The position numbers were made by a program, and so were the translations under genes. Below the pieces are notes generated by a model. The model was not told where the DNA came from. It did not search any database and saw only the letters and a program-made list of their open reading frames with translations. A stretch of 62,921 bases of DNA, the filler included, from Reticulomyxa filosa (taxonomy: Eukaryota > Protista > Foraminifera): NCBI GenBank assembly GCA_000512085.1. It is 21 parts of 21 records of this genome, joined end to end, with 100 filler letters (N's around TTAATTAATTAA, not from the genome) between each part and the next. Parts side by side here need not be neighbours in the genome. Positions count along the whole stretch, not along the records: positions 41,203 to 47,884 come from ASPP01023443.1; 20 more parts are not named here. The stretch is one strand, 5' to 3'. This document shows positions 3,007-47,884 of this stretch, in pieces (the stretch's first letter is position 1; every line of letters begins with the position of its first letter).

Positions 3007-6000
3007 ATGGATACACTCTCTCCCTTTGAAACATTATCTCCATTGCCTGTCCCACTTACTCGTTCTCAATGTGTATTTTACAAGCAAGAAATTCTTGTTT
3101 TGGGGGGATGGAAACAAATAAATTGTTATTCTTATCATGTACTCAAAAATCAGTACAAATTTATTTGTTCTTATCCAAAGAATTTTACATTGACTGGCCA
3201 CAGCGTGATAAAACTCACAAAAAGTGACAATAATTCAAATTATATCACTTTATTGTCTTTCGGCGGACAAGGAGAAAATGAAAAAAAACATACATTAATA
3301 ATGAAATATATTAGTGTTTGGGATGATAACATTAAAATTAAAAAGATTGAAGATTTCAATAAATGGATGCCTTTTGTTAATAATGACAACCGTCGAGTTT
3401 TCATTGGAAGAGAAAAAGATAATTATCATGGCATACGTGCAATAATTACCGGACAACATAGTCATCTATTATTTATCACATATCCTCCAAAGAACATTGA
3501 CGTGTTTAATTTAAATACATTTCGATATGTCAATCACAGTATTTTACCAACTGACGATTACATATGGTATCATTGCTTTGAGCTTAAAAAGGGAGATAAT
3601 TTAACAGCAAAGTATGAATCGGTGTTATTTTGTAAAGCGACAGGATTATTGATCGAATACGATGAAAACGAAAACAAATTCAAATTTCAAAAATTACCTG
3701 TTTTTGCTGATTTGTTACCTTTTTATCGATATGCATATATACAAATCTGCGATTCTATTTTGTTTTTTGGTGGATGGAATGACTACATTGGCTTTAAGTC
3801 AATTGTTTCAAAAGCAGTATGTCAATATTCAATGGATGAAAATAAATGGATAAAATTCGATCACACATTGCCTATTTCATTGAATGATTGCATTGGAGTA
3901 TTGAATGACGATAAGACACATATCCATATTTTGGGAGGAGAAGATGGAAATTGTGATGTGACATCAACACATGTAAAGACCAAAGTGTTAGAATGGATCG
4001 ACACAATTGAAAAAGAAGTACTGGAAAGTGATAAAAACAATAAAAAGAGGATATATGAGTCCAAATCTCCGTTGATTTTATTAACTGGATCAATGAAATA
4101 TAGACGGAGACCATATTTGAAATGTGTCAAACAAGACCTAATTTTGTTACAAAATCTGTTTCAAACTAAATTTGGCTATCAAGTTTTTACTACTTATAAT
4201 CCACGATATCCAATCACGCAATTGCTTTCTTTGAGAAAATTAGACACATTCATTTCAAAGCGTTATTTAAATTTGACTGATACTTCCAATGATAACAAAA
4301 ATATCTACGATGGACTGATATTTGTATGGTGTGGATATGGAAAGAGTCAAGATGACACTTTGATGATCACAAGCGACAACAAACGCAAATGTCTCAAAGA
4401 GATTCAAGACGTGTTTGTAAGACAAACTAACTATTTTGTGAACAAACCAAAAATATTTATAACAATTACATACAGCGATGAAAAAAAAGGAAATGAAGAT
4501 ATGGCAACTGAATTTCGGTATGAAAATAATAAAGATATATTTCACTATTTTTGCAAGCATTCCATTGAAATCAATGATTGGAGACTTGGGATATGAGAGA
4601 AGGAAGCAAAGTAATTTCACAGAGATTTTTTGTCAAATGATTGAAAAAAATATGAACAAAAGTTTGAATGTTATTGTCAAACATGTGGCAGACACAATCT
4701 TTGATGGAAAATTTAAAAAGGATATTTCGGTCACTTATTCTGACATTCATTTGATTCCACAGTTATGTGGTAATGATAATACAAAAGGAACAGTGGTGCT
4801 AATAAAACCACTGGGATTTAAAAGATATTGGAGTAACGAATGGATACGAGCAAATGTGGAAGCGGCAAAAAGAATGGAGAAAATGATTAAAGCAAATGGA
4901 CAAGGATTGATCATTGTGGTCAAAAATACATCTGAATGGGAAAATACAATATTTCCGAATTTAATCAAACTCAATGATTACACTTTCTCATTATCGAAAT
5001 TTTTCAATAATAGAGTGAGCAAAATTTTATATGAAGAATATGGTATATATGTAATAGAAAGAAAATCAGTAATACTTGATGATATAAATATTGATGGAAA
5101 TGTATATGTTGTGAATTGTGAGATAAAATGCCAACAAAATATCAAAATCACATCGCAGCTATTTGTTACAAAGAATGCAATTCTTGATCGACAATTGAGA
5201 CAGTCTATTTTGCCCATTCAATGGGATACCAAAATGAATCATGATATTCCAGTACAATTGCAAGATCTTGAAGACAAAGGAAAAAAGTTGATGAACGACA
5301 ATCTGTTAGATGACTCCATTCTTCTTTTCGAACAACACTTACAACTTTCACTTAATACATTTGGTGCCGATCATCCTTTTGTAGCTGGATCGTATTATAT
5401 GATTGGAGATGTTTACTATGGAAAAAAAAATTATAAACAAGCAATTTTATACTATGAAAAAACTTTACAAATTATGTTTGATAATGTTACAACCAACGAC
5501 TACGTTGCCATTTTATGCCACAGTTTAGGACTGTCTTATTCGAGAATAAAACAGTATGATAAATCGATTGAATATTATGAAAAAGGCTTGAACATTACAT
5601 TGAAATTATTTGGAGATAATTTTCCAGATATCATTGATTGGCACTCCAAACTGGCAAATGCATATAGTAATGCAAAGCGTTTTGGCAAGGCTATTGAATA
5701 TTACGTAAAGATTGTGAAAATTCGATTACATAAATATGGAGCCAGTCAGAGCGATATAGCTGATGCATACGACGATCTAGGCCGCGCTTACCATAGGAAA
5801 AAAATGTACAATAAAGCAATTTTCTATTATGAAAAGGCATTACAAATGTATTTAGATATATTTGGAGTCAAAAATGCCACAGTTGTTAATTTGTATGAAA
5901 ATTTTGCACGAGCTTATACTAGTAAGCGGCAGTATGATAAAGCAATTGAGTGCTTTGAAAAAGCGATAGAAATCATGTTAAGTATATTTGGAGGCAAACA

Positions 6001-7057
6001 TGAAGATATTACCGACACATACATCGATTTAGGAAATGCCTATGAAAAAAAAGGAGCCAATGATAAGGCAATTTTTTATTATAAAAAAGCATTACAAATG
6101 AGATTAGATATATATGGTAACAATAATCTCGATGTCGCTATAGCATATGACAATTTAGCTAATTGCTATATGTGTGATCGACAATATGACAATGCCATCA
6201 AACAATATGAAATATCGATGAAAATAAAATTTGACATTGTTGAAATAAGTCATTCTTCTATTGCTGATTCTTATTGTGGCTTAGGTTGTGTTTACAGTAA
6301 CAAAGGCGATTACACGAAATCAAAGCAATATTTTGAAAAAGAATTAGACATTAGAAAAAATGCATCAGAGGGCGATCATAATAGTGTTGCCAATGTATAT
6401 ATCAACTTAGGGATTACTTGTCGAAACGCAAGAGAATTTGACAACGCAATTCAATATTATGAAGAAGCATTGAAAATTAGAGTGACAAATTTTGGAGCCA
6501 ATCATAGTAGTGTTGCTGAATGCTATACTCAATTTGGGTGTCTTTATGATGACAAAAAACAATTTGACAAAGCATTTACGTCTTTTGAAAAAGCATTGAA
6601 CATTCGACTAGAGATATTTGGACCCAATGATGAAGCTGTTGCCGATTCATATTACGATTTGGGAGATACATGCAATAAGAAAGAACTCTATGATAAAGCA
6701 ATCAACTATCATGAAAAAGCTTTACATATTAGATTGCATATCTTTGGAATAAATCACAATGATGTCGTCAATTCATACCATTCTTTAGGAGTTGCTTATT
6801 ATAATAAAGGAGATCACAATAAATCTATTGAATATTATGAAAAAGCGATACAAATAAAAAAAACAATATCCAAAAAGGTAAATATTACAATTGGTTACTG
6901 GTGTTGGGATTTGGGAAGTACACTGAACACTGTCGGGGAAAGAAAAAAAGCGAGTGAATATTATAAAGAATCATGGAAAGTGTTCAATGTAATTCTAGGA
7001 GAATGGAATACAACAACATTAAGATCGAAAGAGAAAGTAAAAGAACTGACTGAGTGA
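3007..7057 (+). CDS. Kelch-like propeller + inactive caspase-like (peptidase C14 fold) domain + unknown domain + about 14 TPR; one gene split by a 1-nt frameshift near 4541
   Basis: ORFs 3007..4596 and 4478..7057 join as KDIF|TIFASIP and are colinear with the unbroken paralog at 44512-46380 (EDMFTMSVNTS). Kelch-like GG motifs (LVLGGW, LSFGGQ, LFFGGW, HILGG). Caspase-like motifs DGLIFVWCGYG, KPKIFI and SNFTEIFCQMI. 42-aa TPR units of the kinesin-light-chain type. Confidence 0.85.
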
Positions 7058-41039: not shown

Positions 41040-41266
41040 TTCACTGTCACTATTATTTTCATTGCCATTATTATTATTATTATTATTGTTATTATTATTA
41101 TTNNNNNNNNNNNNNNNNNNNNNNNNNNNNNNNNNNNNNNNNNNNNTTAATTAATTAANNNNNNNNNNNNNNNNNNNNNNNNNNNNNNNNNNNNNNNNNN
41201 NNCAAAATGTCGGAATTGGAAAGAAAGGAATGTTCGCTTTGATTTCGAAACAAGAAAAAGTTGCAA

Positions 41267-41974
41267 TCATTTCGATTGATCGGAATTTCGCCAATCGCCA
41301 TTGCCATTGCCACTGCTATTCGTGATCGAGGTGCCATTCACATAACAGCCTTGCATGATTGAATAGATCGTAAATCCTGCTTGCTCCTCAAAGTACGAAC
41401 ATTCCACCGTCACGTTCAAATGTGTCTCCACCAAGTCCAGGTTGCTGCATGTCGAGTCTGGCAGGTAGTATACGTCTCCGTGCACTGCGTTACACGAGTT
41501 GATGGCATACACTTTCTTATCTTTACTATCCGTCTCGCCTGTGTCGAAACATATCCCTGTTGCTGTCGACGTCTCGCTCACCAAGTTGTAACTATCACAC
41601 GACGATAAATACAACTGGATCGATAAATAGTTGTCCTCTCCGTCGCATTCGAATCCGTGGTTGCCTGCTTTGTTGTCCCCTTTTGTATACGTCACTGAAC
41701 TATCTGCCGTCCCCGAACAGTCTGCAACACTGTACTTGTTCTCCGTCACACTCTGTCCGTTCTCCGAACACACGTACTTTGACCAGTCCTGGTTCAGTGC
41801 CCCCTTCTGCACGCAACGGTCCAACGGGTACGGAAACGTTGCCGTTATTGTCGACGCCGAAAAATCACCCAAAAAATACCGTGTGTTTTGCTTCTTTGGA
41901 TAGCTCACGCTACACACACCCACTGAGGCAAGCAACGCCAAGCCATACAGCATTGGCAAATTATCCCAAAGCAT
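41267..41974 (-). CDS. Secreted or surface cysteine-rich protein
   Basis: Hydrophobic signal MLYGLALLASVGVCSV, then two similar Cys-spaced halves (PLDRC...KYVC...YSVADCSG; ATGIC...INSC...YLPDSTCS). Single exon. Confidence 0.7.
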   Translation of the reverse strand: MLWDNLPMLYGLALLASVGVCSVSYPKKQNTRYFLGDFSASTITATFPYPLDRCVQKGALNQDWSKYVCSENGQSVTENKYSVADCSGTADSSVTYTKGDNKAGNHGFECDGEDNYLSIQLYLSSCDSYNLVSETSTATGICFDTGETDSKDKKVYAINSCNAVHGDVYYLPDSTCSNLDLVETHLNVTVECSYFEEQAGFTIYSIMQGCYVNGTSITNSSGNGNGDWRNSDQSK

Positions 41975-42324
41975 GATGATGATGTAGAGTTTTTTTAAAA
42001 AAAGAAAAGGACCAAAAAAAAGATGAACCACCTTCTCAAGTTGCACAATAGCACTTCTTGACATAATTTTTTTTTGAGACTAATATGTGATTTTTTTTAT
42101 AGCAATATCAAATTTCTCAAAGTCAAAATGTTCCACCAACATATATAAATTTTTACGAAATGCAAGAAAAAAAAAAAGGGGGAACACCTCTCACGTTCTA
42201 GTCTTCTTTGAAAAAAATTTATTAATCAAGTTGCTCATTTTGCAAATTTAAAAAAAGAATTTTTTTGTTGAATGAAGATATTTTATGTGATAACAAAAAT
42301 TAAAAAAAAGACTAGGATTATTTG

Positions 42325-44061
42325 TCAAAAGTAATAAGTCGTGCCGGTTTGTGTTTGTGACAAAAGAGAAGAAATGGTAGAATGTCCGTCGATTAATTTC
42401 TGTCTAATACGTGCGCGATCATCAAGCGAGGGGACAGGGCCATATGCCCACCAGCCATTGAAAAAATCATTTCGGCTGATTTTCTCCAAGTTTTGTTTTT
42501 CGCGGAGAATGTATTCGGTCCACAAGTAAAGTACATCGTGGTCCATATCTCGATCGGACAAGTACAACTCACTATTGCATTCCACACACAACAAAAAAAA
42601 AAAAAAAAATAAAAATGTATACATATACATACATGTATATGTATAACCTCTTAAAGATAAGCAAAGACAAAACAATTAACTTCCAAATGGTCTTGGCATA
42701 GGCTTGATCATCCTTCTTAAAATCATCCGACGCATTATCCAGTGAAACCATCAAATGAAGCAAAGCTTTTTCACAATTTTGTTGCCATTGTGTTTTCTAT
42801 TTACATATATATATATATTATATATATATGTATATATAATATATATATATATATTATATATTATATAATATATATATATATATGTATATATATTATATAT
42901 ATGTATATATATAATATATATATTATATATATATATATACAAATACAAACCAATCCTTCAATATTTTTACGAAATCTGTTTGGCAATTGTTCGACCATCA
43001 TTTTGAACAAGCGAGAGGACAGCTTGGAGGACAAAGGGAGCCCCAAATCGACGCAGCGACACTTGACAAACCACAGATGGAGCCCAAGCAATTGCAATTC
43101 GACTCGAAATGTGTTTTCGAGATCAAAGACTTGCCAAAACTCTTTTCGCGCGCATCGCCTTTGCGCCTTCATAAACGAATAGAGCGTGCAGCGATGCAGG
43201 ACTTCGTGTTGGCTGTAATAACCCCAGGAGCGATACAGCCAGTTCCATTTCAGACGATGTCGATCGGGAGGTTCGCAGTCGGCGTCGAAGCCGTACACCC
43301 AGTCGTACACCTCCGGCGGGGAATGCCACACTTCGTAGGCGATATCAGGCGCACTGCCAGTTCGAAGCCATTTGATCGGCATTGTGGGTTTATAGATCGA
43401 GTCTAAAGGAGACCACGACTCTTTTTCTTTTTTTATTGTTTCGTTGGTTGTCTTTGCTCGGAGTCTTGGTTTGTCTTGCAATACATAATTTTGGATTAAT
43501 GACAACGACGATTTCGATATATCCAATGGCTTGCTGTTTGCATCATCATATCATATATCACATATGACATATTATATATGCATATATATATATATAAATA
43601 TATATGTCTATATGTATATAGGTATATGCATATGCATATATAAATGTTTTCTTTTTTTGCATGTACATAACTCAGATATTACTGAAAGTGACCGAAATCC
43701 ATGAATTTCTATGTGTCCATTGTCGTCTTTGATTATGTTGTCTTCTGTTGCTTGCTTCTTTGTCGTTGTGCTTTTTTTCGATGTTTCAATGTCCTTTTTT
43801 TTAAAATTAAATAAATCCATTTGGGGCCCCTTTTTTCTTCCAAAACAAAACAAAAAAATCATTCCAAACCTTTTCATGAACTCCAACCACGTCTTTGGAC
43901 TTTTGCTCTTTGGAAAGTGAATAGCTTCGGACCTGCTTGAGTTGATGTGCGAATCTCCACGACGCAAGTGTCCCGAACGGATGAACCGCAGAACCGTGAG
44001 TTTGATATAATCCAAGCTGTTTATGACAGTGTTTGCAAGTGGAATGAGATAATCTTTGCAT
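42325..44061 (-). CDS. UQCC1: Ubiquinol-cytochrome c reductase assembly chaperone Cbp3/UQCC1 (5 exons)
   Basis: EFWQVFDLENTFRVELQLLGLHLW, SLDNA, YAKTIW.ELY and LWTEYILREKQNL follow the Cbp3 pattern F......DTF..WF....LH.W...YD.....LA.A.WR.......L..YVR.Q...L. Mitochondrial presequence-like N-terminus ending VRSYS. Exons join in frame. Confidence 0.75.
42803..42940. repeat. Imperfect (AT)n microsatellite in a UQCC1 intron
   Basis: About 140 nt of nearly pure AT dinucleotide. Confidence 0.9.
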
Positions 44062-44511
44062 ATCAAATCCTATCGAGAGGCAGGGATGAGAAGGGCAAGG
44101 GGGTTGACGTAGAACAAAAGTTCAGCCGGACTCGAACCTACGTCCTTTGGTGAAACTAAGCGATTTTTCCAAGAGACCAATTCCCCTTTGAAAGTCTGTC
44201 TTTTTTGTATTGTCTTTAGTTGCTTCTGACTTACATTGCAAGTCAACAGACTGCTCAAATTTTGATGTCAATTTTGTTCTTAAAAAAATTTTGAAAAGAC
44301 TGCATGGACAGTGTACAAACGTTTCCCGGAATATCGACATTTATATTATAATAAACCAGCCAAAAAACAAAACAATAATTACATAAAGGGCACCCAAAAA
44401 GCCTTTTTTCACAAACAAAAAAATAAAAACACAATTATTCCGAAGAAAACAAAAAATGAATTAATTCACTTCCATTGATTGATATAAAATACAAAAATCG
44501 TTTACATTGAA

Positions 44512-46380
44512 TCAATAAACTGTTTGGTTGATATTTTTAATCTTTCTTTTTGCTTGTAATGTCTCTGCATTCCATTCACCATACAATAAATGGTAAACTT
44601 TCCATGATTTTTCATAATATTGATACGCCATTTTAATATCTCCTTTTTGTTCAAAAGATAATCCCAAATTCCAACATGATCCACCAATATCTTTATTTAA
44701 ATTTTGAAAAATGTTATTCCTAATATTTAAAGATTTTTGATAAAATGAAATAGATACATCATATTGTCCTTTATAATAATAAGCAATGCCTAAATTATGA
44801 TATATTTGAGCAACAATAGAGAATTGAATTCCAAAAAGAAGTAATAAAATATGTAAAGATTTTTTATAAAAATTGATAGCTTGGTCATATTGTCCTTTAT
44901 CATCATAAGCACTTCCAATTAAATTATAAGAAATGGCAATATAGGGATGACAATAAGGATTATTACTATTATTATTACTAGATCCAAATTTATCAATAGA
45001 TATTTGTAAATGTTGGTACAAATAAGAAATAGCATCATCAAATAATGTTTTTTCAATACATTCCTCTGCTTTTTCTTCAAAATTTTGAAGTTGTAATGGA
45101 ATATCATAGTGAAATTTTTGATTCCATTCAATAAGCATTATATTTTGTTTTGATTGTAAATCAATCATACAATTTTTTGTAAAAAATAACTGTGATGTAA
45201 CATTCACATTTTGCTTACATTCAATTTTACAATTTATTGCATATATATTTCCATCGATATTTATATTATCTAATATTATTAATTTCTTTTTTATTTTATA
45301 TACATAATATTCTCTGTATTCTCTTTTTTCTATTTTTGATGTATTTATTAATGTAATTAAGGAAGAGTATTCATTTTTATAATTTGAAATATTATTTGCA
45401 ACAATAACCAATCCTTCTTCATTTTTTTTAATCATTTCTTCAACCATTTGTGATGCATCTACATTTGCTTTTCTCCATTTTCTATTCCAATGTTTTTTAA
45501 AATTTAAAATTTTAATCTCATCGTTATTGCTGTTTATTGATATAGTGTTATCTTTATTTTCATCATTATTTATTTTTGGAATTAAATAAATTGGTTCAAT
45601 TGAGTTTATTTCTTGATTAAAAACAATATCAATCACTTGTTTGATGATAAAATCAAAACTTTTGTTAATATCCCTTTCAATAGTTTGACATAAAACTTGA
45701 GTAAAATAACTTGGTATTTTTTCATTGTCATGTTCTAAGATATCCACCATTGGTCCCAATGACGTATTTACAGACATCGTAAACATATCTTCATCTTGTT
45801 TATACCATACCTTCCTTTGGATTTTATCATAGCAAATATTTATTAATATCTTTGGTTTAACTGAGCATATATTTTGGATCTCTTTCATTTTATTTTCAGT
45901 TGTAATCAGTGCATCTCCATTTCCATTTCCACACCATACAAAAATCAATCCATCATAGTTATCACAATGTTTGGATATTACATCATTCAAAGTCAATGAT
46001 TCTGTCATCTCAAAAGTATTGAACACACGGAAACCAAATTTAGATTGAAAAAGCGTTTGTAATAAACAAAGATCTTGTTTTGCATTTTCCAAATATGATT
46101 CCATTGATCCTGTTAATAATACCAATGGATTTGTTATTTTCATCTCTTTTTTAAAATAGGCATTGAAGTGGAATTGATCATTTGCAACAATTTGTTGAAG
46201 TTGTTCGTCGGTTTTAATCTCACAACCATTATTGTCGGTTATTTTAATCAATACTTTTCCTTGTTGGTTCTTTTTCCTTACTTCAATTATTTGTTGTTGC
46301 AAAGTTTCAAGTGTTAAACAACTCAAATTAACAAGATAGTCTTTTGAATCAATGGTTACGACTACTCTTCCGGAGGACAT
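44512..46380 (-). CDS. PB1/ubiquitin-like domain + inactive caspase-like domain + unknown domain + about 4 TPR (622 aa, intronless)
   Basis: Colinear with 4063-7057: NPLVLLTGSM..YLENAKQDL.LLQTLFQSKFGFRVF, YDGLIFVWCGNG, KPKILINICY, SYFTQVLCQTI, KKHWNRKWRKANV, INIDGNIYAINC, and TPRs ending ..SWKV....GEWN..TL. The N-terminal ~80 aa has a beta-grasp-like pattern. Confidence 0.88.
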   Translation of the reverse strand: MSSGRVVVTIDSKDYLVNLSCLTLETLQQQIIEVRKKNQQGKVLIKITDNNGCEIKTDEQLQQIVANDQFHFNAYFKKEMKITNPLVLLTGSMESYLENAKQDLCLLQTLFQSKFGFRVFNTFEMTESLTLNDVISKHCDNYDGLIFVWCGNGNGDALITTENKMKEIQNICSVKPKILINICYDKIQRKVWYKQDEDMFTMSVNTSLGPMVDILEHDNEKIPSYFTQVLCQTIERDINKSFDFIIKQVIDIVFNQEINSIEPIYLIPKINNDENKDNTISINSNNDEIKILNFKKHWNRKWRKANVDASQMVEEMIKKNEEGLVIVANNISNYKNEYSSLITLINTSKIEKREYREYYVYKIKKKLIILDNINIDGNIYAINCKIECKQNVNVTSQLFFTKNCMIDLQSKQNIMLIEWNQKFHYDIPLQLQNFEEKAEECIEKTLFDDAISYLYQHLQISIDKFGSSNNNSNNPYCHPYIAISYNLIGSAYDDKGQYDQAINFYKKSLHILLLLFGIQFSIVAQIYHNLGIAYYYKGQYDVSISFYQKSLNIRNNIFQNLNKDIGGSCWNLGLSFEQKGDIKMAYQYYEKSWKVYHLLYGEWNAETLQAKRKIKNINQTVY

Positions 46381-47555
46381 TGAGACTTCAAGTTAGAAAA
46401 AGAAAGTATTTGGGAGTTTTTTTTTCTAAAACAGGGACAAAAAACAAGTGTGCGTTTTTTCGTTCCGATTTTCCATTTTTTTTTCTGTAAAATTGATTTA
46501 TTTTTAAAAAATTTTCAATGAAAGAAAAACTAATGAACATTTCTCATTGTAGAAACCTTTTGCAAATTAGTTTTGATTGTTCTAAAAAAAAACTCGAAGA
46601 ATGAAATATCTTTTAAACATGGAATTTGTATTCGAAATCTTATAAAACATTTTTTAATATTAAATTTATAATTCTACACATCGTGTAAATAGTTTGTGAG
46701 TGTCATAACAAAAAATTATATGGACAACAAAAAAAGTACCCTTTCGTTTTTGATCAACTTTCTTTTCATTTCATTTTTACATTTAAATTTACGAAATTTT
46801 GTTTAAAAAATCGAAGCCTTGATATTATTATTATATCACTCTTACCAACAAATTTAAAAAAAAGCATTAGTAACATCTCATGTTATCAATTTTAAGGAGA
46901 GGAATGAGTGGAAGAAATTAAATAAATGCAATGAATGTTGTTTTTCACAAACAGGAATTTTTAAAAATATTGCAAAAAGAAAAGAAGCCACTCTTTCTCT
47001 CCCCCGTTCATGTGCAACCATAGAAATCACAAAAGAAACCCAAGTCAAACCAAACCTAACCAAACAAAGAAAAAACAACGAAAAAAGCAAATCAAAACAA
47101 CAAAACATTTCTTTCTCAAAAGAAGAACATCCCAAAAAGAACGAGTTGTGTTCATGAAGGTGAAAATAATAACTACGATAATAATAATAAAGAGGAGGGG
47201 GGGGGTGCAAAGAATCAGAACAAACAAAATTGTAAAATTGGGAAAATGTCTTCTTTCTTTTGGTTGATGGATCAACATAATGTTTGTACAATTACAATTT
47301 CATTTGTGCGAAAAAAAAAAAATCATAAAAAGTTTGTTTTTGCACGTACACAAAAAAAAAAAAAAAAAAAAGGGCAAGAACAGAGAAGAAAAAACTCTGC
47401 CATGCAACATACACACAAAGCAAAAATACTTTCCAAAAAAAAAATTTTTATTGTTGTTGTTAGAATTCAAGGGAGAAGAGAAGAAAGGAGTGAAGGAAAG
47501 CTGTGAGAAAAAGAAAAGTTTTTCTTTATTTTTGCATTTGTTGTTATGGCTGTGA

Positions 47556-47844
47556 TTAAGAAGAAAACGCAGATTTGCCATACAAATTCCGGAAAGTATG
47601 TCGGATGACATCACAGACACTAAACACTCGGATTTGTTGATCACTGCCGGCGGTAAGGATCAGGCAAGTGTCGGATGCATTTTGCAGTGGTTGCAATTTG
47701 ACACAGTGGATGGGTTTGCCGTCATGAATCTGATTCATTTTGCCAATGGTAATGGCCATGGTAGCTTTGGTTGTGTCCAATAGACTGATATTCCTAGCCA
47801 ATGGGTTTTGAGTGGAATTTACTCCATTTGTATTGGCATTCTTT

Positions 47845-47884
<40 letters not shown>
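47556..47884 (-). CDS. C-terminal fragment with a WD40-like blade
   Basis: QIHDGKPIHCVKL...LILTAGSDQQIRVF; open from a poly-Asn run at the contig end. Confidence 0.55.

What the first reader, a model, noticed from the sequence alone, without database searches (positions are those of the whole stretch)
44512..46380. Second paralog with swapped N-terminus (PB1-like) and the same dead dyad
Seen: an intact 622-aa ORF on a different contig shares the pseudocaspase, middle domain and TPR caps with 3007-7057. Homology starts abruptly at K(I/S).(N/S)PL(V/I)LLTGSM. Upstream is an ~80-aa module (RVVVTIDSKDYLVNL...LETLQQQI...IKITDNNGCEIKTDEQLQQIV) in place of the Kelch propeller. His is Asn here and the Cys position is again Tyr (KPKILINICY, with a Cys one residue earlier). 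Inference: the module is PB1/ubiquitin-like and might polymerise. The shared Tyr suggests family-level inactivation rather than random decay, and the sharp junction suggests N-terminal domain shuffling.
Basis: partly seen in the sequence, partly recalled or inferred. Interest (0 to 1): 0.8.

Follow-up and report, generated by a model that had tools for sequence, protein, structure and literature searches.

The report
Foraminiferal pseudo-caspase with PB1-like head
This intact gene of the foraminifer Reticulomyxa filosa belongs to a large, modular paralog family that descends from an active caspase-like protease; it has lost both catalytic residues yet is still under purifying selection, and it carries the family's usual PB1-like N-terminal domain.

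Summary
Window 44512-46380 (-) is an intact 622-aa ORF, and the chance of no stop over that length is about 2e-28. It has four parts:
- a beta-grasp module (aa 1-79)
- a caspase-fold domain (aa 81-276) with Asn152 at the His site, Tyr184 at the Cys site and Cys183 one residue earlier
- a family-specific middle domain (aa 295-425)
- KLC-like TPRs

All close relatives are Reticulomyxa filosa proteins.

The N-module is PB1/CIDE-N-like. AF2 pLDDT is 88, the top structural matches are CIDE-N, PB1 and Par3-NTD (Z 8-9), the Bem1 PB1 profile hit has E 0.003, and the family shows an OPCA-like acidic motif.

It is not a swapped N-terminus. It heads 77 of the 158 family proteins collected, so it is the default and the Kelch head is the exception. 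In seven mapped paralogs it sits on its own exon, followed by a conserved phase-1 intron that this copy lacks.

The dyad was not lost once. Foraminiferal and environmental outgroups keep His and Cys. Only 6 of 49 R. filosa members in the tree keep both. The Cys column changes at least 22 times, and an AU test rejects a single loss (p 5e-5).

dN/dS in dyad-less caspase domains is 0.3-0.55, significantly below 1.

Best reading: a non-catalytic, c-FLIP-like scaffold or regulator. Polymerisation and expression are untested.

The parts
44512..46380 (-). Whole gene: intact single-exon ORF of 622 aa plus stop codon. It is a Reticulomyxa filosa protein (P0001) with the architecture PB1-like module, pseudo-caspase domain, middle domain, TPR array.
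46144..46380 (-). N-module, aa 1-79. It is a beta-grasp (strand-strand-helix-strand-strand-helix-strand) that is PB1/CIDE-N-like. The OPCA-like stretch is I47-T-D-N-N-G-C-E-I-K-T-D-E59. Basic residues are R5 and K13.
   Evidence: AF2 pLDDT 88.1. VIA matches: CIDE-N Z 9.1, MEK5 PB1 9.0, Par3-NTD 9.0, NBR1, p62 and Bem1 PB1 8.0-8.5, ubiquitin-like domains about 7. Profile hit to Bem1 PB1 at E 0.008 and 0.0026. Column counts.
45553..46140 (-). Caspase-fold domain, aa 81-276, without a catalytic dyad. At 196 aa it is shorter than the 210-260 aa spanned in full-length paralogs. Loops are deleted, including about 17 aa right after the Cys column.
   Evidence: VIA matches: CED-3 Z 15.8, caspase-9 15.5, c-FLIP-L protease-like domain 13.6, metacaspases 10.6-12.9. 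Foldseek caspase-6/-8/-3 at E about 1e-5. Family HMM E 1e-59. Alignment gaps.
45925..45927 (-). Codon AAT = Asn152, in the catalytic His column (GHG in outgroups).
45829..45834 (-). Codons TGC-TAT = Cys183-Tyr184. Tyr184 occupies the catalytic Cys column (ACRG in outgroups). Cys183 is unique to this copy.
45106..45498 (-). Family-specific middle domain, aa 295-425. It is modelled as a helix followed by about eight short strands, with most 10-residue blocks at pLDDT about 86-96 and a dip to 62-75 near protein aa 330-350. No known relative was found.
   Evidence: AF2. Profile of 53 members: no Pfam family recurs, and the best PDB hit has E 0.026 to an uncharacterised protein; there are weak hints of a left-handed beta-helix or bactofilin. 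Its fold was not tested on its own.
44515..45105 (-). TPR region, aa 426-622. It is a kinesin-light-chain-like TPR_12 array with the family's conserved C-terminal cap (GEW...T...K).
   Evidence: Pfam TPR_12 E 4e-16. Kinesin light chain TPR hits at E 1e-9 to 1e-11. Consensus.

Best explanation
The gene encodes a non-catalytic caspase homologue (a pseudo-caspase). It belongs to a large paralog family known so far only from Reticulomyxa filosa. The family descends from an active protease closer to animal caspases than to metacaspases. Its usual layout is a PB1-like N-module, a caspase domain, a middle domain and a TPR array. In this copy His has become Asn152 and Cys has become Tyr184, and several active-site loops are shortened, so peptide-bond cleavage is not expected. 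This much is shown by sequence and predicted structure. The fold and all four domains are kept by purifying selection, which is shown by codon analysis. The rest is inferred. The protein probably acts as an adaptor or regulator. The PB1-like module would mediate head-to-tail association with the dozens of paralogs that carry the same module, including the few that keep His and Cys. The dead caspase domain would pair with, or compete with, active partners as c-FLIP does with caspase-8. The TPRs would bind a ligand or cargo. The family's modularity is helped by gene structure: in the seven paralogs mapped, the N-module sits on its own exon followed by a conserved phase-1 intron. This copy has lost that intron and most of the linker.
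For: Organism and family: all 29 word-search relatives are R. filosa. The profile search gives 112 representatives at E<=1e-30. Named members are all R. filosa except Bolivina argentea and unnamed metagenome proteins. Caspase fold. Dyad. All 18 outgroup rows keep the His column and 17 keep the Cys column; 6 of 49 family rows keep both. Repeated loss: Cys column at least 22 changes, His column at least 16; AU test p 4.7e-5. Selection on the caspase domain (NG86, bootstrap 95% range): dead pairs P0029/P0043 0.45 (0.29-0.70) and P0007/P0021 0.29 (0.19-0.45); active pair P0025/P0028 0.29; query versus P0006 0.55 (0.35-0.83); query versus P0002 0.27. Open frame: P about 1.7e-28. N-module fold and PB1 signal. 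The N-module heads 77 of 158 proteins. A phase-1 GT..AG intron follows the N-module in P0002, P0006, P0007, P0025, P0028, P0029 and P0055. The c-FLIP-L protease-like domain is among the structural matches (3h13, Z 13.6).
Against: No evidence of expression: no RNA run was listed. No Pfam PB1 hit for any of 23 N-modules, even at E 10. The only sequence link to PB1 is one borderline hit. In the query the OPCA-like motif is partly degenerate: position 51 is Asn and position 56 is Lys. Oligomerisation, heterodimerisation with active paralogs and ligand binding are all analogy. This copy has the weakest family-HMM score of the full-length members and the shortest caspase domain. Its dN/dS against its nearest paralog (0.55) is higher than in other pairs, so constraint on its caspase domain may be relaxed. 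For the query's pairs dS is 0.6-1.4, near saturation, and NG86 is crude for such AT-rich genes.
Confidence: 0.6

Rival explanations
1. The family is an innate-immunity or conflict system of the giant syncytial cell. TPR arrays would sense ligands, PB1-like heads would drive assembly, and the few active caspase-like paralogs would be the effectors. Dyad-less copies such as this one would be decoys or sensors that have lost their effector. This widens the best explanation rather than contradicting it.
For: There is a very large lineage-specific expansion with mix-and-match heads: N-module, Kelch, or neither. The caspase domain may be present or absent (28 N-module-plus-middle proteins) and the number of TPRs varies. 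Effector residues were lost repeatedly. Bacterial caspase-TPR_12 proteins exist as a recurrent architecture (row 9).
Against: No STAND or NTPase domain was found and no sign of diversifying selection: pairwise omega is 0.3-0.6 in the TPR part too. There are no functional or expression data.
Confidence: 0.25
2. The gene is a recently disabled, functionless copy whose frame merely happens to be open still.
For: It has the weakest caspase-HMM score among full-length members (1e-59 against 1e-61 to 1e-113). Several loops are deleted. Omega is 0.55 against the nearest paralog. No RNA evidence was found.
Against: A 622-codon open frame at 25% GC has P about 1.7e-28. Omega is significantly below 1 in both the caspase and N-module parts. 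All four domains and the conserved C-terminal cap are present. The terminal branch is of ordinary length: 0.56 against a median of 0.57.
Confidence: 0.1
3. It is still a protease and uses the shifted Cys183 with another general base.
For: A Cys lies one residue before the canonical position.
Against: His is replaced by Asn. Cys183 is unique to this copy; paralogs have I, T, V, A, G, S or M at that position. The loop after the Cys column is deleted. Paralogs with other residues in the Cys column (W, N, T, S, F, H, E, I) show that the site is unconstrained.
Confidence: 0.05

Closest known systems
c-FLIP-L and other pseudo-caspases
   Same: The caspase fold is kept with both catalytic residues replaced. 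An N-terminal oligomerisation domain sits ahead of the dead protease domain, and active paralogs are present in the same genome. The c-FLIP-L protease-like domain is a direct structural match (3h13, Z 13.6). From my own recollection, not checked here, c-FLIP also has Tyr in place of the catalytic Cys.
   Different: The head is a beta-grasp (PB1/CIDE-N-like), not tandem DEDs. A further middle domain and a TPR array follow. There are dozens of dead copies that arose repeatedly, rather than one conserved regulator. No partner is known.
Initiator caspases with a prodomain (CED-3, caspase-9, Dronc, caspase-8)
   Same: These are the best structural matches for the protease-like domain (Z 13.5-15.8). 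The general layout is the same: an assembly domain followed by a caspase domain. Family members P0024, P0025, P0027, P0028, P0030 and P0076 keep GHG and ACxx.
   Different: The query has no dyad. The prodomain belongs to a different fold class (not the death fold). The middle and TPR parts are C-terminal additions.
PB1 domains (Bem1, p62, NBR1, MEK5, aPKC/Par6), Par3-NTD and CIDE-N domains
   Same: The beta-grasp topology is the same. These domains fill the top 16 VIA ranks (Z 7.8-9.1) and the top Foldseek ranks. Bem1 PB1 is the top sequence-profile hit. The family motif I-T-D-x-D/N-G-x-x-I-E-T-D-E/Q-x-L-x-x-A-F resembles the OPCA motif (the comparison with OPCA is from my own knowledge).
   Different: There is no Pfam PB1 hit. 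One member weakly hits CIDE-N and six hit the ubiquitin-like GRHL1_C family. The canonical beta-1 Lys is not clearly conserved: K/R at position 5 in 13 of 23 members, K13 in 18 of 23. Head-to-tail assembly is untested.
Bacterial pseudo-orthocaspases (Klemencic et al. 2019, PMC6426788)
   Same: They are caspase homologues in which the His-Cys dyad is replaced, with Tyr at the His position, while the fold is conserved.
   Different: They are prokaryotic p20-only proteins with a fixed Tyr/Ser pair. Here the replacements vary widely (Y, N, G or R at the His column; Y, W, N, T, S, F, H, E or I at the Cys column) and arose many times within one eukaryotic genome.
Reticulomyxa caspase-like proteins described by Klim et al. 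2018 (PMC5982838)
   Same: This is the same protein family. That paper already reports that Reticulomyxa Peptidase_C14 proteins group with animal caspases rather than metacaspases. One of them serves as an outgroup in PMC10959488.
   Different: As far as the passages read here show, those papers treat the proteins as caspases. They do not describe the PB1-like head, the middle domain, the TPR tail, the caspase-less members or the widespread loss of the dyad.

Membership tests
Peptidase C14 (caspase) fold, clan CD | Caspase/haemoglobinase alpha-beta fold | tested here: met
   VIA: CED-3 Z 15.8 (160 residues aligned, rmsd 2.8) and caspase-9 Z 15.5. Foldseek: caspase-6/-8/-3 at E about 1e-5. The model's pLDDT is only moderate in this part.
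Peptidase C14 (caspase) fold, clan CD | Match to the Pfam PF00656 profile | tested here: not met
   The query has no hit at E<=1. Eight of 25 paralogs hit (best E 5e-19), and the query matches the family's caspase HMM at E 1e-59, so homology is established only through the paralogs.
Peptidase C14 (caspase) fold, clan CD | Catalytic His in the (S/G)HG motif | tested here: not met
   Asn152 (AAT) in VWCG-N-G. Outgroup rows all have GHG.
Peptidase C14 (caspase) fold, clan CD | Catalytic Cys in the QACxG-type motif | tested here: not met
   Tyr184 (TAT) aligns with caspase-3 Cys163. Cys183 lies one residue out of register and is not conserved.
Peptidase C14 (caspase) fold, clan CD | Proteolytic activity | not testable with these tools
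   Needs an enzyme assay.
PB1 domain (PF00564) | Beta-grasp fold with strand-strand-helix-strand-strand-helix-strand order | tested here: met
   AF2 pLDDT 88.1, pTM 0.73. Elements: E4-10, E13-19, H24-36, E42-48, a single bridge residue at 54, H58-66, E71-78.
PB1 domain (PF00564) | Closer to PB1-type than to other beta-grasp domains | tested here: inconclusive
   The top 16 VIA rows are PB1, CIDE-N or Par3-NTD (Z 7.8-9.1) against about 7 for ubiquitin-like domains. The margin is 1-2 Z units, and PB1 cannot be separated from CIDE-N.
PB1 domain (PF00564) | Sequence-profile match to PB1 | tested here: inconclusive
   No Pfam PB1 hit for 23 members at E<=10. The family profile hits Bem1 PB1 as the best PDB sequence at E 0.008 (23 sequences) and 0.0026 (62 sequences).
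PB1 domain (PF00564) | OPCA acidic motif and/or conserved basic residue for front-to-back binding | tested here: inconclusive
   Family columns: D49 in 14/23, D51 in 13/23, G52 in 19/23, E56 in 13/23, D58 in 19/23 (acidic in 20/23), K13 in 18/23, K/R5 in 13/23. The query keeps D49, G52, E54, D58, E59, R5 and K13 but has N51 and K56.
PB1 domain (PF00564) | Homo- or hetero-oligomerisation | not testable with these tools
   No multimer prediction or experiment was available.
Pseudo-caspase (c-FLIP-like regulator) | Dead dyad with the fold kept under purifying selection | tested here: met
   Dyad. Omega 0.27-0.55 for the query's caspase domain and 0.29-0.45 for sister pairs that share a dead dyad, with bootstrap upper bounds below 1.
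Pseudo-caspase (c-FLIP-like regulator) | Pairs with and modulates an active paralog | not testable with these tools
   Active-looking paralogs exist (P0024, P0025, P0027, P0028, P0030, P0076), but interaction is inferred only.
TPR (kinesin-light-chain-like TPR_12) | Pfam TPR_12 above the gathering score | tested here: met
   59.4 bits against a cut-off of 30.1, aa 523-592. KLC1 and KLC2 TPR hits at E 1e-9 to 1e-11.

The most novel reading that the evidence does not exclude
R. filosa runs a combinatorial assembly network. More than 70 proteins would share one PB1-like head-to-tail polymerisation module. A handful of active, caspase-like proteases would be recruited, activated or blocked by many dead-caspase and caspase-less paralogs whose TPR arrays read different signals. 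This would be an independent invention of prodomain-driven proximity activation and decoy regulation (the caspase-8/c-FLIP logic) in a unicellular giant syncytium, perhaps for local cytoplasm sacrifice or defence.
Probability: 0.15. Interest if true: 0.8.

Novelty: new variant of a known kind. Interest (0 to 1): 0.55.

Why it matters
Caspase-like proteins of Reticulomyxa are already used in the literature as the nearest non-animal relatives of animal caspases (PMC5982838, PMC10959488). This analysis shows that most of them are not proteases at all. They belong to a modular family built from a PB1-like head, a caspase or no caspase, a new middle domain and TPRs. In that family the dyad was lost many times while the fold stayed under selection. 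That changes how these sequences should be used as 'caspases' in studies of apoptosis evolution. It also offers a natural series of repeated enzyme-to-pseudoenzyme transitions within one genome. Finally, it suggests a testable parallel to regulation by prodomain and decoy outside animals.

Tried and rejected
- No RNA run was listed for the gene, so read laying was not used and expression is untested.
- Pfam on the query alone finds only TPRs. Pfam on 23 N-modules finds no PB1. It finds GRHL1_C (another ubiquitin-like fold) in 6 members and single weak CIDE-N and ubiquitin-like hits.
- The middle domain gave nothing usable. The ESM Atlas feature search returned no hit. The Atlas shape search and VIA on the 390-aa model were filled by caspases. 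A 53-member profile found no PDB or Pfam relative beyond E 0.026 to an uncharacterised chain and weak hints of a left-handed beta-helix or bactofilin.
- YN00 in Biopython failed on many pairs, so NG86 with a codon bootstrap was used. The closest dead pair, P0010/P0018, is too similar to be decisive (omega 0.57, range 0.24-2.2).
- Rejected: 'swapped N-terminus'.
- Rejected: a single ancestral inactivation.
- Rejected: exon shuffling at the Kelch/caspase junction of RFI_20013, because no intron lies there.
- No Rfam family or tRNA lies in the piece.
- Literature searches found no paper that links Reticulomyxa with PB1, CIDE or pseudocaspase.
Full report
**What is there**

The piece (window 41203-47884) is one whole 6,682-base contig. 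One search lists an intact ORF at 44512..46380 on the minus strand, with an ATG start and 622 aa. The stretch is 25% GC. From its own base composition the chance of 622 codons without a stop is about 1.7e-28, and the other five frames carry 37-85 stops. The frame is therefore being maintained.

A word search restricted to aa 1-470 returned 29 relatives, every one a Reticulomyxa filosa protein (RFI_ numbers) at 26-45% identity. The window comes from this freshwater foraminifer. The assembly is GCA_000512085.1, as the paralog loci show.

**Domain anatomy**

Pfam sees only TPRs in the query (TPR_12, E 4e-16, aa 478-600), and the PDB sequence search sees kinesin-light-chain-type TPRs. I built HMMs from the family alignments. 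On the query they delimit four parts:
- an N-module, aa 1-78, E 7e-32
- a caspase-like domain, aa 81-276, E 1e-59
- a middle domain, aa 295-425, E 1e-56
- the TPR region with a conserved C-terminal cap

**The caspase-like domain**

- Eight of 25 paralog segments hit Pfam Peptidase_C14 (best E 5e-19). The query itself does not.
- The family profile hits caspase-3 among PDB sequences at E 1e-3. That alignment places the family's Tyr on Cys163 of QACRG.
- An AlphaFold2 model of aa 81-470 has mean pLDDT 77.
- VIA matches are CED-3 (Z 15.8), caspase-9 (15.5), caspase-8, caspase-4, MALT1, the c-FLIP-L protease-like domain (13.6) and Dronc. Metacaspases score lower, at 10.6-12.9.
- Foldseek and the ESM Atlas shape search agree.
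- This fits Klim et al. 2018 (PMC5982838), who reported that Reticulomyxa Peptidase_C14 proteins group with animal caspases.

In the query the His column holds Asn152 (AAT) in VWCG-N-G. The Cys column holds Tyr184 (TAT) in KPKILINICY, with Cys183 (TGC) one residue earlier. The spacing from G-N-G to LITTEN equals that from S-H-G to IIFGTN in caspase-3 (read from the alignment and the sequence).

The query's domain is the shortest of the full-length members: 196 aa against the 210-260 aa typical of the others. Loops are deleted, including about 17 residues directly after the Cys column.

**How the dyad was lost**

The exhaustive profile search found 426 representatives at E<=0.001 and 112 at E<=1e-30. 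I extracted 69 near-complete caspase segments and built a careful IQ-TREE tree of 67 of them, with the two dyad columns removed.
- The 49 R. filosa rows form one clade (support 100/99).
- All 18 outgroup rows carry GHG and 17 carry a Cys in the ACRG-type motif. The outgroup consists of Bolivina argentea proteins and unnamed ENA, JGI and Logan metagenome proteins.
- Inside the family only six rows keep both residues: P0024, P0025, P0027, P0028, P0030 and P0076.
- The Cys column shows Y most often, and also W, N, T, S, F, H, E and I. The His column shows Y, N, G and R.
- Parsimony needs at least 22 changes in the Cys column (at least 8 between C and Y) and at least 16 in the His column (12 between H and Y).
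- Independent Cys-to-Tyr changes sit in well-supported places: P0048+P0029+P0043 inside an otherwise H/C clade, P0050 beside the H/C protein P0024, the large 38-row clade, and outgroup P0147.
- An AU test rejects a tree that holds all 40 Cys-less members together (delta lnL 392, p 4.7e-5).

The inactivation is therefore a family-wide tendency, not one inherited event. TGY-to-TAY and CAY-to-TAY are both single GC-to-AT transitions, and these genes have GC3 of only 0.14-0.28. Mutation bias is thus a sufficient explanation for the recurring Tyr. A selective preference for Tyr cannot be excluded.

**Is the dead domain still constrained?**

I fetched the DNA of ten paralogs for the dN/dS comparisons (two more were fetched later for the exon maps), mapped exons with ungapped tblastn, and computed Nei-Gojobori dN/dS per domain with a codon bootstrap. 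The caspase-domain values are:

| Pair | Dyad state | dN/dS | 95% range |
|---|---|---|---|
| P0029/P0043 | both Y/Y, sisters | 0.45 | 0.29-0.70 |
| P0007/P0021 | both N/Y | 0.29 | 0.19-0.45 |
| P0025/P0028 | both H/C | 0.29 | 0.19-0.45 |
| P0010/P0018 | both Y/N, very close | 0.57 | 0.24-2.2 (uninformative) |
| query/P0006 | dead/dead | 0.55 | 0.35-0.83 (dS 0.64) |
| query/P0002 | dead/dead | 0.27 | 0.12-0.44 (dS 1.4, near saturation) |

The N-module gives 0.18-0.58. Constraint on this particular copy may be somewhat relaxed.

**The N-module**

- AlphaFold2 on a 23-sequence alignment gives pLDDT 88 and pTM 0.73, with strand-strand-helix-strand-(short strand)-helix-strand order.
- Foldseek's best rows are NBR1, Bem1, Cdc24 and aPKC PB1 domains, Par3-NTD (TM 0.74) and CIDE-N, all at E 3e-3 to 2e-2.
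- In the exhaustive VIA search the top 16 rows are all CIDE-N, PB1 or Par3-NTD (Z 7.8-9.1). Ubiquitin-like domains follow at about 7.
- The family profile's best PDB sequence is Bem1 PB1, at E 0.008 with 23 sequences and 0.0026 with 62.
- Column counts give the motif I-T-D-x-(D/N)-G-x-x-I-E-T-D-(E/Q)-x-L-x-x-A-F. From my own knowledge of PB1 domains this resembles the OPCA acidic motif. Basic residues recur at position 5 (13/23) and position 13 (18/23).
- The query keeps D49, G52, E54, D58, E59, R5 and K13 but has N51 and K56.
- No member hits Pfam PB1.

I conclude that the module is a PB1/CIDE-N-type beta-grasp. Membership of PB1 proper is not established, and polymerisation is an untested inference.

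**Swapped or default?**

I scanned 158 proteins with the three HMMs: the word-search hits plus the best 150 of the profile search. The result:
- 37 have N-module + caspase + middle
- 28 have N-module + middle, with no room for a caspase domain (for example P0055)
- 12 have N-module + caspase (many are cut by contig ends)
- 14 have caspase + middle
- the remainder are single-domain proteins, fragments or outgroup sequences

So 77 carry the N-module, and every one I looked up is from R. filosa.

Kelch-type heads occur in P0038 (RFI_20013, 1,336 aa), in P0064 and P0130 (Kelch + middle), and in a Bolivina argentea Kelch-caspase, P0145.

BLASTP of the query against P0038 starts exactly at N84/S354, at PL(V/I)LLTGSM. 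However, the module in this gene is the family's ordinary head, not a replacement.

**Gene structure**

In P0002, P0006, P0007, P0025, P0028, P0029 and P0055 the N-module ends at an exon boundary followed by a short GT..AG intron. Its phase is 1 by my reading of the junction sequences. These genes cover both major clades and the caspase-less type. The intron is therefore probably ancestral, and the head is an exon-sized cassette.

The query has no intron there and the shortest linker: FKKEMKIT runs straight into the first caspase strand.

RFI_20013 has no intron at its Kelch/caspase junction, so that fusion is not explained by the same intron.

**Middle domain**

It is modelled as a helix plus about eight short strands. 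Most 10-residue blocks have pLDDT about 86-96, with a dip to 62-75 near protein aa 330-350. A 53-member profile finds no recurrent Pfam family and no PDB relative. Weak similarity to a left-handed beta-helix enzyme (E 1.4) and one bactofilin hit are only hints. It was not folded alone, so its fold remains open.

**Mechanism**

Shown:
- the architecture
- dyad loss
- recurrent loss across the family
- purifying selection
- a modular gene family

Inferred, by analogy with c-FLIP/caspase-8 and with PB1 scaffolds:
- The protein is a non-catalytic adaptor.
- Its head associates with other family heads.
- Its dead caspase domain pairs with or competes with active paralogs.
- Its TPRs bind a ligand.

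A broader reading as a defence or conflict system is compatible but has no direct support. Residual catalysis through Cys183 is unlikely. A functionless copy is unlikely given the open frame and omega below 1.

**Novelty**

The proteins are deposited as hypothetical proteins, and the caspase similarity has been published (PMC5982838). I found no description of the following in the papers searched:
- the PB1-like head
- the middle domain
- the caspase-less members
- the scale and recurrence of dyad loss

I rate it a new variant of a known kind: a pseudo-caspase with an assembly domain.

**Not done**

There was no evidence of expression. There was no multimer modelling. No codon-model likelihood tests were run. 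The middle domain was not folded on its own.

Noticed in passing
window 41267-42064, 42861-43526 and 47556-47801 compared with 44512-46380: Composition differs sharply within one 6.7-kb contig. The pseudo-caspase gene has GC3 0.175, and eleven family CDSs range 0.14-0.28. The three neighbouring ORFs have GC3 0.48-0.57. The family as a whole is far more AT-rich at silent sites than its neighbours. The cause is unexplained; it could be expression level, age of the copies or mutation regime.
   Followed up: partly
P0055 (RFI_32894; L012), P0051, P0053, P0056, P0057 and others: Twenty-eight representatives have the N-module joined to the middle domain and TPRs with only about 20-50 aa between them, so they have no caspase domain at all. 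P0055 keeps the phase-1 intron after the N-module. The caspase domain therefore appears dispensable for part of the family.
   Followed up: partly
L009:535-597, L010:532-604, L007:553-687, L008:257-313, L003:556-593, L005:729-777, L012:535-600: A short GT..AG intron, read as phase 1, lies directly after the N-module exon in seven paralogs from both clades. It is absent from the window's gene and from P0021.
   Followed up: yes
L011:1813-1852 (P0038 = RFI_20013): The only annotated 'intron' of the Kelch-headed paralog is 40 nt long, is not a multiple of three, and shows no GT..AG ends. The public gene model may be hiding a frameshift or a sequencing error at aa 504/505.
   Followed up: no
P0145 and P0155 (EukProt Bolivina argentea): Another foraminifer has caspase-like proteins with an intact His/Cys dyad. 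One of them (P0145) has a Kelch-type head, so the Kelch-caspase combination probably predates R. filosa.
   Followed up: partly
P0042 (812 aa): This protein has two complete middle domains (aa 11-143 and 400-543), which suggests an internal duplication or a fused gene model.
   Followed up: no
window 42861-43526 (-): The neighbouring 221-aa ORF matches the ubiquinol-cytochrome c chaperone family (PF03981, E 8e-6). The 265-aa Cys-rich ORF at 41267-42064 (-) and the 81-aa ORF at 47556-47801 (-) have no Pfam match.
   Followed up: partly
window 42805-42939, 43548-43642, 47847-47884: There are AT dinucleotide microsatellites and an ATT repeat at the contig end. They account for the spurious 'IYIYIY' ORFs.
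   Followed up: no
P0129 (RFI, 369 aa): A family member with N-module plus middle domain is named 'MEK1 interacting protein 1' in the public record. The basis of that name was not checked.
   Followed up: no
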